Below, in pieces: positions 22,265-38,096 of a stretch of 64,000 nucleotides of DNA. How positions within the stretch are numbered: position 1 is the first letter of the stretch; each line of letters opens with the position of its first letter. Origin of the DNA: Sminthopsis crassicaudata (lineage: Eukaryota); assembly GCF_048593235.1 (NCBI RefSeq), contig NC_133620.1:23809123-23873122 (forward strand), read 5' to 3'. The notes under the pieces are model-generated. The model searched no databases and was not told the origin of the DNA. It saw only the letters and a program-made list of their open reading frames with translations. Both the position numbers and the translations under genes were made by a program.

Positions 22265-22325
22265 GTTTTGGGGATCACATTCACTGGAGAACACTAGAAG
22301 ATGGAAAGAAAGAGGCAGCTGCCAG
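22265..22325 (+). CDS. TXNDC12: TXNDC12 exon 2 ([21 protein letters not shown])
   Basis: 61 nt, T-rich tract with tag acceptor, gtagga donor; matches ERp18/AGR1. Confidence 0.97.
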
Positions 22326-22729
22326 GTAGGAAGAGTCACTATAGGTGACCCATTGTGGGGGAGATGGAGGATGTGTGGGTGGTGGAAGGGACTCTGGTTT
22401 GAGTTTGAGAATCTGGCTTCCAATTCTGTGAATGATGCTTACTGCCTTACACGACTTTGATCACATCCCTGGAAAGGAGCAGAACTGACTGGGCCCGACT
22501 GCCCTGGCTGGGGCTCCATGTGAAAAGGAGAGAGGGTCCAATGGAGCTGCTTTTAGAGCTTGAAGAGATCTTGGAAATCATTCAGTGTAACTGGTGTAAA
22601 ATGAAGGCTTTGTGTGACCTATGAGGTGCTGGTGGCCCCAGATTAATGATCCCTCCAACCTAGATTTTAGCAAAAGAGGTCCACAGCCCTACTAGAAAGT
22701 AAGGAATGGAGCTGAATGATTGCCTAGGA

Positions 22730-25993: not shown

Positions 25994-27064
25994 ATGCCGC
26001 TGGTGGTGCTGTGTGGGCTGCCGGACAGCGGCCGGAGTCTGCGAGCAGACGAGCTCCGCAGGGCGTTGGAGGCTGAGGGTCGGCCCGTGACGGTCGTGCG
26101 CGATGCCGACGTGCTTGGGCCCGGTGGGCCGGAGGCTCTGTGCGAGGCCTACTCGGACCCGGCCCGCGAGAAGGCGCTGCGCGCAGCTCTCAAAGCCTCG
26201 GTGGAGCGCGGCCTGGGCCCCCGGGCCGTGGTCCTCCTCGACTCTCCCAATTACATCAAAGGCTTCCGCTACGAGCTCTACTGCCTGGCGCGGGCGGCGC
26301 GCACCCCGCTCTGCCTGCTCTACTGCCTGAAGCCCCGGCCGCGGGCGCCGGGCGCCGGGGAAGACTGCCTCCCGAAGGCCGGGGCTGCAGCCAGCAGCTG
26401 GAGACCGAAGCTCGCGACCTCGGAGCCGGAGCGGGGTCTGCCAGCGGGGGACGCCCCTGAGGATGGCGACCCTCAGTGGAGAGGTTCGGAGGAAGATCCC
26501 GAATCAAGACTAGAGGGAGCCCCGGATTCAAGGGCACAAAATCCTGGGAGCCCGGGGGCCCCGAGGGACGGAGCGGCGGGGGAGCTGGAGCCAGAGCCGG
26601 ACCTCGGCTTCCCCCCGGAGCTCGTGGACGCCCTGGCCCAGCGCTTCGAGCCCCCGGATTCCCGCAACCGCTGGGACCGGCCCCTGTTCACGGTACTGGG
26701 GCTGGAGGAGCCTCTGCCCCTGGCCCAGATCCGGGCGGCCCTCTTCGAGAGCCAGGTGCCCGCCCCGCATCAGGCCACGCAGTCCCAGCCGCTGGCTTCC
26801 ACCAACTTCCTGCACCAGCTGGATCAGGTCACGAGCCAGGTCCTGACAGCACTGATGGAGGCCCAGAAGAGCGCCGTCCCCGGGGACCTGCTGTCGCTGC
26901 CCGGGACCACGGAGAGGCTGCGCTTCAGCCGCCCGCTGTCCATGGCCGAGCTGAGCCGGCTCCGGCGCCAGTTCATCTCGTACACCAAGCTGCACCCCAG
27001 CCAGGAGAACCTGCCGCAGCTGGCCAACATGTTCCTGCAGTACCTGGGCCAGAGCCTGCACTGA
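25994..27064 (+). CDS. KTI12: KTI12 chromatin-associated homolog (Elongator regulator, PSTK-like P-loop protein), intronless, 356 aa
   Basis: ORF contains MPLVVLCGLP, LDSPNYIKGFRYELYCLAR, RFEPPDSRNRWDRPLF and the C-terminal LHQLDQVTSQV...LRRQFISYTK...NMFLQYL, all matching KTI12. High GC3; nested in TXNDC12 intron 2 as in eutherians. Confidence 0.97.
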   Translation: MPLVVLCGLPDSGRSLRADELRRALEAEGRPVTVVRDADVLGPGGPEALCEAYSDPAREKALRAALKASVERGLGPRAVVLLDSPNYIKGFRYELYCLARAARTPLCLLYCLKPRPRAPGAGEDCLPKAGAAASSWRPKLATSEPERGLPAGDAPEDGDPQWRGSEEDPESRLEGAPDSRAQNPGSPGAPRDGAAGELEPEPDLGFPPELVDALAQRFEPPDSRNRWDRPLFTVLGLEEPLPLAQIRAALFESQVPAPHQATQSQPLASTNFLHQLDQVTSQVLTALMEAQKSAVPGDLLSLPGTTERLRFSRPLSMAELSRLRRQFISYTKLHPSQENLPQLANMFLQYLGQSLH

Positions 27065-27256: not shown

Positions 27257-27262
27257 AATAAA
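27257..27262 (+). terminator. KTI12: KTI12 polyadenylation signal
   Basis: AATAAA about 190 nt after the stop codon, followed by a GT/T-rich downstream element (ggtttttgtttgggttttt). Confidence 0.8.
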
Positions 27263-31759: not shown

Positions 31760-31833
31760 CTTTAAAGCCCTTGTTTGCGGAGTCCAAGGAGATCTCAGAA
31801 CTTGCTCACAATTTTATTATGGTCAATCTTGAG
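31760..31833 (+). CDS. TXNDC12: TXNDC12 exon 4 ([25 protein letters not shown])
   Basis: 74 nt, atcag acceptor after a long T tract, gtaagg donor; matches ERp18. Confidence 0.97.
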
Positions 31834-33960: not shown

Positions 33961-34949
33961 TTCCCTCTATAGGAAGCCTTTCCCATTTGCCCTTGATCCT
34001 GGTTCTTTCCCTTTGTCCATATTAATTGTTATCTTGTCTGTATCTTGTTTGTACACAGTAGTTTGCTTGTTCTCTCCCTCATTACAGCTGCTAGAAGGCT
34101 GGGGACATTTTTGCCCTAGTACACAGTGCCTGCCACATAGTAGGTGCTTAAAAATGTTTTTTGGTGACCAACAGTAGTCGACCTGAGTGATCACCGTGGC
34201 TTCTTATCACCCTTCTAAAGTTTTGTCATTCAGCTCTCTGGGCTGCTCTTCCCATTCGTACATTGTTCTCTTAGTTCTACCCTTTTCTTTTTGTATCAGT
34301 TCATAAAACTTTTCCCTTGCTTCTCACACATCTTATTCATGGTTTCTTACAGCATTCCACCCATACAGCCATCCAAACTTTGTTCACTCCTTCCCCAATT
34401 TCCACTTTGCTTCCCCTAACAGTGTTGCTATAATACTGGGGTGAATATAGCAGTTCATGCTTTTTCAGAACAACTCAGCCAAAATTTATGAGGCATCTCC
34501 TGGTGCTTGTAATAGGAAGGACAAAAATGAACTTATTCCTGCCTTCAACATATTTTTATTCTGCTGAGCACTAGAGGCAGCTGTAGTGGGGAAAGTACTG
34601 GTTTTGTTTTCAGGGGTCTTAGATTCAAATCCTGATGCTGTTATTATCTATATGACCCTTAAACTTTGGGCCTGACAAGGTGGGGATAGAGGCAGCGATT
34701 TGAACCCAGGTTCTCTGGGTGCCATACTGATCCATACTTGAGCAAAGGGAACTGTTGTCAGGTAGGACAGAGACCTCAAAGGGATGGTAAGGGGCCTGGG
34801 TCAGGTGCTCTAGGGGCAAACTAAGAGCTCACTGGGGTCAAGGACAAGAGTGTTCCTGAAGATGGCATGGAGAAAGGCTCCTGTAGACTCGTCTTTCTTG
34901 GGTGAGTGGGATTCAGGGAAGTGAATGATCCTGCCTTGGTTGTCCACAG

Positions 34950-35019
34950 GATGAAGAAGAACCCAAGGATGAAGCCTTTAGCCCTGATGGCGGTTATATT
35001 CCAAGAATTCTTTTCCTGG
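34950..35019 (+). CDS. TXNDC12: TXNDC12 exon 5 ([23 protein letters not shown])
   Basis: 70 nt, cacag acceptor, gtaagc donor; contains the [10 protein letters not shown] motif of the AGR/ERp18 family. Confidence 0.98.
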
Positions 35020-36424
35020 GTAAGCTCAGGCTTTGTGTTCTGAATGTTGGGTAAATGCATGACTGGAAGGAAAAGGTAAGACAAAGGAAGAAGCGTTCCC
35101 AAAGCACCTACTGTGAGCCAGACACTGTGCTAACGGCTGTGTGCACATATTATCTCATTTGACCCTCACAAGAATCCTGGGAAGCTAAGGTAGACAAAAG
35201 TTATGTGTCTGAGTATCTGAGGCTGGATTTGAATTCAGGTCTTCCTGACTCCAGCTCAGTGCTCATCGTACCCATCAAATTGCCCCGAATTTCATTTGAT
35301 CCTCACAGGAAACCTGGGGTGTAGGTGCTATTGTTGTCCCAATTTTACAGTTGAGGAAATTGAGGCAGACGGGTTAAGTGACTTACCCAGGATCATACAG
35401 TGCTCCATGCTCTTAGCTCTGTGTAAACCCCCACGGTGCCAGATCATTGCCTACCTGGTGGCAGCATGGACCCCCAAATCACAGAAACTCAAACAGGTTC
35501 TTCAGTTAGCAAATGATGGCACAGTGAAGATAATGCTCAGTTCTGTTCCTTTCTGAGGTTTGTGAAGCCCTTTCTTACAGCTGTTTGGTAAGTGGGCTGA
35601 AGAGGCTAATTTATAGAATATAGATTAAGAGCCCCAATTTATAGATGTGTAAATAGAAGGAACATGGCTTGTGCAAGGTCACATGGCCAGTCAATGTGTT
35701 ACCAGTCAGTAACACCTACCTGTGCCAAGTGATGGGGAGACTGTCTCCGGCCAGGCAGGACACAGGTGGGTGGAAGGGGTGATATCTGGAGGAGCAGAAA
35801 GGGCCTGGCTAGGAAGGGCTTGGAGGGTTTCCTGGTTCCTGGAAGTGATAGGAGTATTTTTGTTGGAAGTGGGATTGAACCTGAGTTAGGAAAATCACAT
35901 TAGTTCCCCCATGAAGGGGAGACTGGAGTGGAGAGACTGGGGCCGGCTTTGAGCTTTAGGGCTCCCCAGGAGGAGTGAAAAGCATTCCCACCTTGCTGTT
36001 GGTGTGCCTCGTACCCCTGCCAAATGGAGAGTTCTCTGGGACTGGAGTCAGGCCAGCTCGCTGAGCAGAATTCTTGTGAACTGTGGGGCATGAATAAAAT
36101 GAGCTCTGGCATAGCCTCAGGAAGGCTTCAAGGCCTACCACTGACCCATTAGTGGCTGCGGGTCTCAGTTAGTGAGAATGGAGGCCTTATTGCCGATTTT
36201 ATTGGAGGATAAATGGAGCTAGAATCAGCAGGTCTGGGGTTGGAATCCTGATGGTCAATCTCAGTTTTCTCATCTGTAAAATGGGCATGATTTGATGCCT
36301 AACGCTGTAAGAATCTTATAAGAATCAAATGAGATCCATGTAAAGTGCCTTGGGAGCCTTGCACACTCTTAGGAAGGCTGAGTTATTATGACATATTTGA
36401 ACACTTTTCTCCTCTGTATCTTAG

Positions 36425-36508
36425 ATCCCAGCGGTCAGGTGCGCCCCGACATCATCAACGGGAAAGGAAATCCCAGCTACAAGTACTTCTACATCAACGC
36501 TGACCAGG
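36425..36508 (+). CDS. TXNDC12: TXNDC12 exon 6 (DPSGQVRPDIINGKGNPSYKYFYINADQ)
   Basis: 84 nt, cttag acceptor, gtgtgt donor; matches ERp18. Confidence 0.96.
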
Positions 36509-38016
36509 GTGTGTTGGGGCAGGGTGGACGGGAGGGGGAAGCTGCAGCTCCCCAACTTGGCCAGGAAGTAGCAGGTTCAGGATCTGCATGAGAAAGTCAG
36601 TTAAAGAAATCTTTATAAAGAACCTACTGTGTGCTACCTGGGTCCCACATGTGGTACAGGAAGGAAAGTGCAGGGAGGTGTAAACTCGGCTAGTTAATCT
36701 CTGCCATGACCAGAACTGAGAGCCAAAAAAGCCTTCACTGGAAGCCTTCAGGGCAGACTGTAATTAGGACTTCCGAGAGCTGGCAGTGAAAGCACAGGCC
36801 CTTGTGTTTGTCAGCTACATCTAAGGGAAAGCCTTGTGGTATAATTGGAGACCCCCAAGGGGATGTGGCAGGAAATGGGCAAAGAGAGAAGGGTAGAGTG
36901 AGGGCAGCTCCCAGATCCCTGGCAGCACCTAAGCTGGTGGCTCCAGAGCTGGGAGCCAGGGCCGTCCCTAGGAAGAGTGGGGGGCAGGGAGGTCGGTCTG
37001 GTTTGGGCAGGTTGCCCCCCTCAGCTGGTATTTCTGCCATCGAGCTTCCTGTGATCATCAGGATATCATTCCAAGGGCAGCTGCCCAGCCTCTCAGAGGG
37101 TTGCCACTCCCCCTCCCATGTTTGGAGTATTTTCTGTGCTTGGCACTAATGGCAGGAAGGCTCTTAAGCTGGGCGGTCCCGAAGAAGGCCATCCCGATAG
37201 GAGGCCCAGGAAACTCCGAGCTGTCTTCATGTCCTTGGAAGTCCTGTGGGAGAAGCTCCAGAGGCCACTTGGGCTTCCTTGCATTAAAGCCCCTCAGAGG
37301 GGAATGGGCTTCCCAGGATGGAGGTAGTCAGGTACAGATGAGACTGGAAAGGCCGGAGGTCCCTCCTTAGTCTGAGAAGTCCACCCCACATCCCAAGATG
37401 TCCTGGGATCACTCAGGGGTCACTGCCCTGCTCAAATCTAACCTCCCCACCCCCAGCCTTAGTCCTGGATTCTTTTCCAGAAGGCTCCTTCACTCCCTTG
37501 TTTTCTGTATTTCTGAACATTTTTTCTTGTTTATTGCAAACTTGATCATCAATTTCACACCCATCATCTCCCAGTATTGGCCCAACTCCTTGCTTTTGCG
37601 CTGACCACCCCCCACAGCTGGAGCTCTCCTACCTCCTTGACAAGAACTCCTCTCATATCCCGTCTCCTACAGAAGGCTTCCCAGCCCTTCCTTCCCCAGA
37701 GATCACCTCCCAGCCACTGCCAGCATTCTGTGCAGACCCCCTGGAAGCCCTTGAAGATGAGAGCTACCTTTCCCTTTATTTGTGCCTGGTAGGGAGCCTG
37801 GCACTGTGCCCAGCCAGCGTGCACAGGGACAGGTGCCACAAACACCGGCATTTGATACAAAGAGCAGGCAAGGGAAGAAATTTAAGAACCAGGCTCCTCC
37901 TGGGTCCAGCATCAGTGCCAAGTGGCACGGCTGCCCCGTCACCCCTCCTGGATTCTCTTTCTTCCCCTTTGGGTGATGTCTCCTTGTTTTTCCCTGTTTT
38001 TTTTTTTTTTTTTCAG

Positions 38017-38096
38017 TGGTTGAAGGGATGAAGGAAGCCCAGGAAAAGCTGACGGGTGACGCCTTCCGAAGAAGCCACCTGCAAGATGAGCTGTGA
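38017..38096 (+). CDS. TXNDC12: TXNDC12 exon 7 ([26 protein letters not shown])
   Basis: 80 nt, long T tract with cag acceptor, ends in the ER-retrieval motif QDEL. All 7 exons total 513 nt, i.e. 170 aa plus stop. Confidence 0.97.

What the first reader, a model, noticed from the sequence alone, without database searches (positions are those of the whole stretch)
26015..26038. KTI12 has lost the invariant Walker-A lysine (GLPDSGRS instead of GxPxSGK[S/T])
Seen: codons 8-15 read GGG CTG CCG GAC AGC GGC CGG AGT, i.e. G-L-P-D-S-G-R-S. Arg14 is CGG, two substitutions away from a Lys codon, so a single base-call error is unlikely. Position 11 is acidic Asp, and the conserved DSLNYIKG motif reads DSPNYIKG (Pro85). 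The rest of the ORF, including RFEPPDSRNRWDRPLF and the C-terminal tRNA-binding region, is intact and conserved. Known: Kti12 is a PSTK-like tRNA-stimulated ATPase required for Elongator-dependent U34 tRNA modification; Lys14 is the Walker-A residue in yeast and human; K-to-R is the classical change that cripples hydrolysis in P-loop NTPases. Inference: this lineage may run Elongator with a pseudo-ATPase or rewired KTI12, or the catalytic role has moved elsewhere.
Basis: partly seen in the sequence, partly recalled or inferred. Interest (0 to 1): 0.75.

Follow-up and report, generated by a model that had tools for sequence, protein, structure and literature searches.

The report
Marsupial KTI12 carries arginine for Walker-A lysine
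The KTI12 gene here really has arginine in place of the ATP-binding lysine, but every marsupial examined shares this change, dogs, some bats, a shrew, a sloth and a galago acquired it independently, and the domain is still under normal selection, so it looks like a tolerated natural variant, not a dead enzyme.

Summary
Window 25994-27064 (+) is an intact single-exon KTI12 of 356 aa (Pfam E 6e-79). Its Walker A reads GLPDSGRS, with codon 14 = CGG, and its Walker B reads DSPN.

The interpretation needs revising.
- R14 and D11 are not special to this species. All 12 marsupial KTI12 proteins found carry them (five orders), and codon 14 is CGG in the six marsupial coding sequences read.
- R14 also arose independently in at least six placental lineages: all Canidae, some Myotis and Eptesicus bats, Sorex, Choloepus, Otolemur and a squirrel-like rodent.
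- All 128 P-loop-bearing KTI12 cluster representatives, nearly all non-mammalian, keep K.
- dN/dS of the ATPase core is the same in marsupials (0.126) and placentals (0.125).
- The gene sits at the ancestral locus, inside a TXNDC12 intron.
- A published natural K14L variant of fungal Kti12 is still functional.

The best reading is a tolerated, long-fixed conservative replacement in a working KTI12. A binding-only switch or a co-adapted pocket (D11, R36, L81, loop insertion) remains possible.

I found no paper reporting K14R in KTI12. I class it as a new variant of a known kind, of moderate interest.

The parts
25994..27064 (+). KTI12 coding sequence: single exon, 356 codons plus stop
   Evidence: PF08433 E 6.1e-79, residues 1-351 against profile 1-270/271; 94% identical to Antechinus flavipes KTI12
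26015..26038 (+). Walker A / P-loop, GLPDSGRS (codons 8-15)
   Evidence: identical in all 12 marsupial proteins
26033..26035 (+). Codon 14, CGG = Arg in place of the Walker-A Lys
   Evidence: CGG in six marsupial coding sequences; AAG in Nycticebus and Elephas; AGG in Otolemur and Choloepus; CGG in Sorex
26024..26026 (+). Codon 11, GAC = Asp (Tyr, Ser or Cys elsewhere)
   Evidence: D11 is found only together with R14, in marsupials and independently in Otolemur
26099..26104 (+). Codons 36-37, CGC GAT = Arg36-Asp37. R36 is fixed only in marsupials. D37 is the conserved Asp at the end of strand 2, and I align it to Ct D77 / Sc D45 (my own alignment, from memory for the yeast sequence).
   Evidence: D37 is nearly invariant; role of Ct D77 from PMC6511879
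26240..26251 (+). Walker B of the DxTN-type kinases, reading D83-S84-P85-N86. L85P is shared with Antechinus only.
   Evidence: CTC to CCC
26339..26608 (+). Mammal-only insertion, variable and predicted disordered (residues 116-205)
   Evidence: absent from amphibian and fish KTI12; pLDDT below 50 for residues 116-203; dN/dS 0.47
26609..27061 (+). [quoted passage not shown]
   Evidence: dN/dS 0.062 in marsupials
27257..27262 (+). AATAAA polyadenylation signal, about 190 nt after the stop codon
   Evidence: read directly from the sequence; not tested
22273..22326 (+). Upstream TXNDC12 coding exon piece (host gene, same strand)
   Evidence: 18/18 residues identical to the TXNDC12 part of P0109
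31774..38093 (+). Downstream TXNDC12 coding exons, at about 31774-31833, 34947-35020, 36412-36510 and 38016-38093
   Evidence: tblastn with the TXNDC12 part of P0095, exon by exon; the exons were not joined

Best explanation
This is the orthologous, intact and selectively maintained KTI12 of a dasyurid marsupial. The Walker-A lysine was replaced by arginine on the marsupial stem (AAG to AGG to CGG) and has stayed fixed since. By my own estimate that is 80 million years or more. Arginine keeps the long side chain and the positive charge. In this slow, tRNA-stimulated PSTK-like ATPase that is evidently enough for the job KTI12 does for Elongator. The N-terminal domain still folds as a P-loop domain and is as constrained as in placentals. 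I infer that it still binds ATP, probably with altered affinity or rate. Shown here: the sequence state, its phylogenetic distribution, the constraint and the synteny. Inferred: that nucleotide binding and at least some hydrolysis persist. All the nucleotide changes involved go from A/T to G/C in a very GC-rich gene (GC3 0.72-0.90). GC-biased fixation may therefore have helped a near-neutral change spread repeatedly.
For: Every marsupial KTI12 found has GLPDSGRS: 12 proteins from 10 species in 5 orders. Codon 14 is CGG in the six marsupial coding sequences read. R14 occurs in 6 of 95 placental 90%-identity clusters with a readable P-loop. These are all seven canid taxa listed; Myotis yumanensis, M. 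brandtii and Eptesicus (but not M. myotis or M. davidii); Sorex fumeus; Choloepus; Otolemur (but not Nycticebus); and a squirrel-like Logan protein. The fewest K/R changes on a gene tree built without the P-loop columns is 10. The placental R14 genes lie in the same TXNDC12-nested locus and arose on different backgrounds, without the marsupial companion changes. NG86 dN/dS for the ATPase core (residues 1-115) is 0.126 in marsupials and 0.125 in placentals; for the C-terminal part it is 0.062 and 0.075. The other pocket residues are kept: S15, D37, D83, N86, Y87, I88, K89 and the RFExPDSRNRWD motif. The AlphaFold model keeps strand 3-8, loop and helix 14-27 at pLDDT 87-92. In the literature, K14A kills Kti12 (PMC6511879). 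The natural K14L of Eurotiomycetes rescues yeast kti12-delta and keeps ATPase activity at high ATP, with Kd rising from 1.5 to 25 uM (PMC7363723).
Against: No biochemical measurement exists for any R14 KTI12. In many P-loop NTPases K-to-R keeps binding but abolishes hydrolysis (general knowledge). Outside mammals K is invariant in 128 of 128 representatives, so the site is not freely exchangeable. Placental R14 lineages are all shallow, at family level or below, which could mean that R14 is mildly deleterious there. Marsupials carry extra fixed changes around the pocket that a purely neutral reading does not need.
Confidence: 0.6

Rival explanations
1. Binding-only switch (pseudo-ATPase). R14 lets the domain bind ATP but not hydrolyse it, so marsupial, canid and other R14 KTI12 proteins act on Elongator as nucleotide-loaded tRNA adaptors. 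ATP turnover by KTI12 would then be dispensable in mammals.
For: K-to-R classically separates binding from hydrolysis in P-loop NTPases (general knowledge). Strong constraint on the core fits a domain that must still bind nucleotide and Elp1. The role of Kti12's ATPase activity is described as ill-defined (PMC11995267).
Against: In yeast, ATPase-defective K14A and T15A mutants lose Elongator function (PMC6511879). K14L shows that the lysine amine is not needed for catalysis in Kti12 (PMC7363723), so Arg need not block it. Nothing was measured here.
Confidence: 0.25
2. Co-adapted, rewired pocket. In marsupials R14 is locked in by companion substitutions (D11 in the P-loop, R36 next to D37, L81 two residues before Walker B D83, and a 4-residue insertion after G42). 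Together these restore or retune catalysis.
For: These changes are fixed in all 11 marsupial proteins compared and occur in no more than 10% of placentals and outgroups. D11 is seen only with R14, in two independent lineages. R14 has persisted in marsupials far longer than in any placental lineage.
Against: R14 arose in canids, bats, Sorex and Choloepus without D11 or R36, so it needs no companions. Two co-occurrences carry no statistical weight. All the changes run towards G/C and could be hitch-hiking on GC-biased fixation.
Confidence: 0.13
3. Artefact or dead copy: a sequencing or assembly error, or a retrocopy or pseudogene with the working gene elsewhere.
For: KTI12 is intronless, so a retrocopy would look the same.
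Against: The same codon is present in six independent marsupial assemblies. The ORF is intact with dN/dS about 0.06-0.13. The gene sits in the ancestral position inside a TXNDC12 intron, as in the placental loci fetched. No marsupial protein with GKS appears among the 120 best hits. Eighteen runs from eight studies hold the stretch.
Confidence: 0.02

Closest known systems
KTI12 / Kti12 (yeast, Chaetomium, human), the PSTK-like tRNA-dependent ATPase that supports Elongator (PMC6511879; PDB 6qp0)
   Same: Full-length PF08433 match. Same domain order: P-loop ATPase domain, then the tRNA-binding C-terminal domain. Same Walker B DSxN, RFExPDSRNRWD and LRRQFISYTK motifs. Same genomic nesting in TXNDC12 as in the placental loci fetched.
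   Different: Arg replaces the Walker-A Lys, which those studies treat as the central catalytic residue. Asp is at position 11, Arg at 36 and Pro at 85.
Eurotiomycetes Kti12 with a deviant Walker A (K14L/I) and an elongated linker (PMC7363723)
   Same: A natural, clade-wide replacement of the Kti12 Walker-A lysine in an otherwise conserved gene with Elongator intact. It is the precedent that Kti12 tolerates loss of this lysine.
   Different: Here the residue is Arg, not Leu or Ile, so the charge is kept. The clade is marsupials, plus scattered placentals, rather than fungi. The long mammalian insertion lies inside the ATPase domain (residues 116-205), not in the inter-domain linker, and it is present in K14 mammals too, so it does not co-vary with residue 14.
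Engineered Walker-A K-to-R mutants of P-loop NTPases (for example RecA and Rad51-type; general knowledge, not tested here)
   Same: The same substitution at the same motif position.
   Different: Those are laboratory mutants that usually bind but do not hydrolyse ATP. Here the change is natural, fixed and under purifying selection.
PSTK (O-phosphoseryl-tRNA(Sec) kinase; PDB 3a4l, 3adb)
   Same: Homologous fold and domain order, with a weak direct sequence match (E about 1e-3).
   Different: PSTK is a true kinase that keeps GKS/T. The window protein is clearly KTI12, not PSTK.

Membership tests
KTI12 (Pfam PF08433) | Full-length match to the family profile above the curated cut-off | tested here: met
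   265.8 bits against a cut-off of 22, residues 1-351 on profile positions 1-270 of 271
KTI12 (Pfam PF08433) | N-terminal Walker A GxxxxGK[ST] | tested here: not met
   GLPDSGRS, with Arg at the Lys position; the Gly, Gly and Ser positions are kept
KTI12 (Pfam PF08433) | Walker B of the DxTN-kinase type (hhhhDSxN) followed by YIKGxRYxL | tested here: met
   VVLLDSPNYIKGFRYEL; D83, N86, Y87, I88, K89 and G90 are invariant columns; position 85 is Pro instead of Leu
KTI12 (Pfam PF08433) | [quoted passage not shown] | tested here: met
   invariant columns; dN/dS 0.049 for residues 246-356; helices at pLDDT 84-91
KTI12 (Pfam PF08433) | Orthologous locus: intronless gene inside a TXNDC12 intron, on the same strand | tested here: met
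   TXNDC12 exons on both sides in the window; same arrangement in 5 marsupials and 5 placentals
KTI12 (Pfam PF08433) | tRNA-stimulated ATPase activity, and binding to Elp1/Elongator | not testable with these tools
   needs recombinant protein and assays as in PMC6511879
Pseudo-ATPase (catalytically dead P-loop domain) | Loss of catalytic residues, together with relaxed constraint on the pocket or demonstrated lack of hydrolysis | tested here: inconclusive
   Only the Walker-A Lys is changed, and conservatively. S15, D37 and D83 are kept and constraint is not relaxed. Hydrolysis was not measured.
Eurotiomycetes-type deviant Kti12 (PMC7363723) | Leu or Ile at position 14, co-occurring with a 55-60-residue linker between the N- and C-terminal domains | tested here: not met
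   Residue 14 is Arg. The long insertion (116-205) lies upstream of the RFEPPD motif, inside the ATPase domain, and is shared by K14 mammals.

The most novel reading that the evidence does not exclude
Marsupial KTI12 carries a co-evolved, remodelled nucleotide pocket: R14 with D11, R36, L81 and a 4-residue loop insertion. By my own estimate it has been locked in for 80 million years or more. It binds ATP but turns it over little or not at all. U34 tRNA modification by Elongator would then not need ATP hydrolysis by KTI12 in these mammals. Dogs, some bats, shrews, a sloth and a galago would be younger natural replicates of the first step.
Probability: 0.2. Interest if true: 0.75.

Novelty: new variant of a known kind. 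Interest (0 to 1): 0.5.

Why it matters
The Walker-A lysine is among the most conserved residues in biology. In Kti12, K14A abolishes ATPase activity and Elongator-dependent U34 modification. What the KTI12 ATPase is for remains an open question (PMC11995267).

This finding supplies a natural series of K14R proteins:
- one very old and fixed (all marsupials);
- one at family level (Canidae, which includes the domestic dog);
- several very young ones (Myotis species differ from one another).

The series is a ready-made test of whether ATP binding or ATP hydrolysis is what Elongator needs. It also tests whether companion substitutions entrench a deviant P-loop. Finally, it is a caution for automated calls of 'dead enzymes' from a single motif residue.

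Tried and rejected
After that I sent no window letters overlapping those places to any search tool. The only later scripted uses were local: one script printed codons from the codon alignment made earlier (none in 26270-26326), and another copied the notes' 'by words' search.

2. Expression is therefore only inferred. Runs of 62-850 million letters hold 82-94% of the sampled words. That is too little data for a DNA run of a mammalian genome, so these are probably RNA libraries. Read-through from the TXNDC12 pre-mRNA cannot be excluded.

3. Sequencing error, retrocopy and pseudogene were all rejected.

4. A second GKS-bearing marsupial paralogue. None appears among the 120 best protein hits. 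The genome itself could not be searched, because no tool here covers vertebrate assemblies.

5. Link between the mammalian insertion and residue 14, as in Eurotiomycetes. Rejected, because the insertion is present in K14 and R14 mammals alike.

6. Distances between residues 11, 14, 36 and 37 in the AlphaFold model. The coordinates are not exposed, so this was not measured. I ran no fold search.

7. The monotreme state of codon 14 could not be determined, because no monotreme protein was identified among the hits.

8. Earlier scan notes. Nothing was recorded near this place, and no note mentions KTI12.

9. Literature. No paper holds KTI12 together with 'marsupial' or 'K14R'. Smejda et al. 2021 on human KTI12 is not in the library.

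Full report
**What is in the window.**
Positions 25994-27064 (+) hold one uninterrupted ORF of 356 codons. It matches the Pfam KTI12 family end to end: PF08433, E 6.1e-79, residues 1-351 on profile positions 1-270 of 271. It also matches the solved ATPase domain of Chaetomium Kti12 (6qp0, E 9e-19) and, weakly, archaeal PSTK.

Codons 8-15 (26015-26038) read G-L-P-D-S-G-R-S, with codon 14 = CGG (26033-26035).

An AlphaFold model built on a 23-sequence alignment keeps the canonical strand (3-8), loop and helix (14-27) at pLDDT 87-92. It shows residues 116-203 as disordered, with pLDDT below 50.

An AATAAA lies at 27257-27262. I read this from the sequence and did not test it.

**It is the orthologue, at the ancestral locus.**
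TXNDC12 coding pieces lie on the same strand on both sides. One is at 22273-22326. The others are at about 31774-31833, 34947-35020, 36412-36510 and 38016-38093. I searched these exon by exon with the TXNDC12 parts of fused annotations and did not join them.

The same nesting, KTI12 inside a thioredoxin-domain gene on the same strand, is recorded for Monodelphis, Antechinus, Trichosurus, Dromiciops, Notamacropus, Otolemur, Sorex, Choloepus, Nycticebus and Elephas.

The closest proteins are Antechinus flavipes (94%) and Sarcophilus (93%), so the window is from a dasyurid marsupial.

**Distribution of Arg14.**
- *Marsupials.* All 12 marsupial KTI12 proteins retrieved read GLPDSGRS. They cover Antechinus, Sarcophilus, Vombatus (two), Trichosurus, Notamacropus, Petaurus, Dromiciops, Monodelphis (two), Gracilinanus and Macrotis. 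The window and the five marsupial coding sequences I fetched all use CGG. The change therefore dates to the marsupial stem.
- *Placentals.* R14 is not confined to marsupials. It occurs in 6 of 95 placental 90%-identity clusters with a readable P-loop.
  - The canid cluster: dog, dingo, Mexican wolf, Lycaon, Nyctereutes, Vulpes vulpes and V. lagopus all read GLPYSGRS.
  - A vespertilionid bat cluster in which species differ. Myotis yumanensis, M. brandtii and Eptesicus have R. M. myotis and M. davidii have K.
  - Sorex fumeus, plus a 92%-identical Logan relative.
  - Choloepus didactylus (GLPHSGRS).
  - Otolemur garnettii, which reads GLPDSGRS like marsupials, while its relative Nycticebus has GLPYSGKS.
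  - An unnamed protein closest to Sciurus.
- *Codons.* They trace the path: AAG in K species, AGG in Otolemur and Choloepus, CGG in Sorex and marsupials.
- *Number of changes.* On a gene tree of 137 vertebrate KTI12 proteins, nearly all mammalian, built without the P-loop columns, the fewest K/R changes is 10. By taxonomy there are at least seven independent origins.
- *Outside mammals.* A profile search of 1.84 billion cluster representatives returned 150 KTI12 representatives. They were mostly short-form, non-mammalian proteins such as abalone, chicken, frog and an amoebozoan. All 128 with an N-terminus have K, and the other 22 are N-terminally truncated.

Arg14 is thus a mammalian phenomenon. 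It is universal in marsupials and sporadic in placentals.

**Selection.**
Pairwise Nei-Gojobori dN/dS values are shown below.

| Region (window residues) | Marsupials | Placentals |
|---|---|---|
| ATPase core (1-115) | 0.126 | 0.125 |
| Insertion (116-205) | 0.47 | 0.61 |
| C-terminal part (206-356) | 0.062 | 0.075 |

The nucleotide-binding core shows no relaxation in the clade that has carried R14 longest. Other pocket residues known from the Chaetomium and yeast work are kept: S15, D37, D83, N86, Y87, I88, K89 and the RFExPDSRNRWD motif (residue roles from PMC6511879).

**What the literature says.**
- K14A abolishes ATPase activity in CtKti12 and phenocopies kti12-delta in yeast (PMC6511879; confirmed in PMC11995267).
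- The same laboratory later found that Eurotiomycetes naturally carry Leu or Ile at position 14. K14L rescues yeast kti12-delta. It lowers ATP affinity (Kd 1.5 to 25 uM) without losing activity at high ATP (PMC7363723).
- So the lysine amine is not indispensable for Kti12 catalysis.
- That survey reports K14 as otherwise constant and does not mention mammalian Arg14.
- No paper in the library pairs KTI12 with 'marsupial' or 'K14R'.

**Most likely mechanism.**
Arg14 is a tolerated, conservative replacement in a working KTI12. The long cationic side chain is kept and the domain is still constrained. The same change has been accepted repeatedly on different sequence backgrounds without the marsupial companion changes. 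I infer that ATP binding persists, and probably slow hydrolysis too.

Every substitution concerned runs from A/T to G/C:
- AAG to AGG to CGG (codon 14);
- TAC to GAC (codon 11);
- CTC to CCC (codon 85);
- ATC to CTC (codon 81).

The gene has GC3 of 0.72-0.90 in marsupials. GC-biased fixation of a near-neutral change is therefore a plausible driver. This is inference only.

**What remains open.**
Marsupials also fix D11, D19, P31, T33, R36 (next to D37), L81 (two residues before Walker B D83) and a 4-residue insertion after G42. D11 is found only with R14, in two independent lineages. Placental R14 lineages are all shallow, whereas the marsupial one is ancient. This fits, but does not prove, entrenchment by companion changes, or a shift to an ATP-bound, non-hydrolysing mode. 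Only biochemistry can decide.

L85P sits at the 'T' position of the DxTN-type Walker B. It is shared only with Antechinus, and that position also varies elsewhere: Met in some rodents, Ile in bats.

**Limits.**
I sent no window letters overlapping those places to any search tool afterwards.
- Expression in this species is only inferred, from small runs that hold most of the stretch.
- The genome could not be searched for a paralogue. No GKS-type marsupial KTI12 appears among the best 120 protein hits.
- The monotreme state is unknown.
- An earlier scan note (s1-180351) says that marsupial ELP5 at its ancestral locus is a relic replaced by a retrogene. I did not check it. It suggests that Elongator components have other marsupial-specific histories.

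**Verdict.**
The 'pseudo-ATPase in this lineage' reading is not supported as stated. The variant is real, old, apparently unreported and experimentally tractable. It is a new variant of a known kind, of moderate interest.

Noticed in passing
P0298 / P0150 (Gallus and other birds), not in the window: Bird KTI12 is short (238 aa) and strongly derived. The Walker B region reads DASNELRS instead of DSLNYIKG. The P-loop reads GPPGSGKS and keeps Lys.
   Followed up: no
P0098, P0109, P0095, P0132, P0133 (Thomomys, Tupaia, Sciurus, Eptesicus, Myotis davidii): Several proteins annotated as TXNDC12, or over-long 'KTI12' proteins, are KTI12/TXNDC12 fusions or read-through models. The cause is that KTI12 sits in a TXNDC12 intron on the same strand.
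   Followed up: partly
window 26339-26608 (residues 116-205): This is a mammal-only insertion inside the ATPase domain. It is low in complexity, predicted disordered (pLDDT below 50) and evolves fast (dN/dS 0.47-0.61). It is absent from fish, amphibian and bird KTI12.
   Followed up: partly
window 26039-26041 (codon 16, CTG): Leu16 is unique to this window. Other marsupials have Arg or Gln (CGG or CAG) and placentals have Arg. The equivalent T16A change in Chaetomium Kti12 is nearly neutral.
   Followed up: no
alignment A1, columns after window G42: Fish and amphibian KTI12 have LGxxRN after the conserved Asp, an Arg that I align to Ct R84. Placentals read LGAED, and marsupials have a 4-residue insertion there. 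The pocket-lining loop was therefore remodelled in mammals generally.
   Followed up: no
P0131, P0134, P0132 against P0135, P0133 (Myotis and Eptesicus): Closely related vespertilionid bats differ at the Walker-A residue, K in some and R in others. This points to very recent changes, or to a polymorphism sorted among species.
   Followed up: partly
That would be a second marsupial-specific event in the Elongator pathway.
   Followed up: no
They encode the highly conserved RYELYCLARAARTPLCLLY stretch.
   Followed up: no
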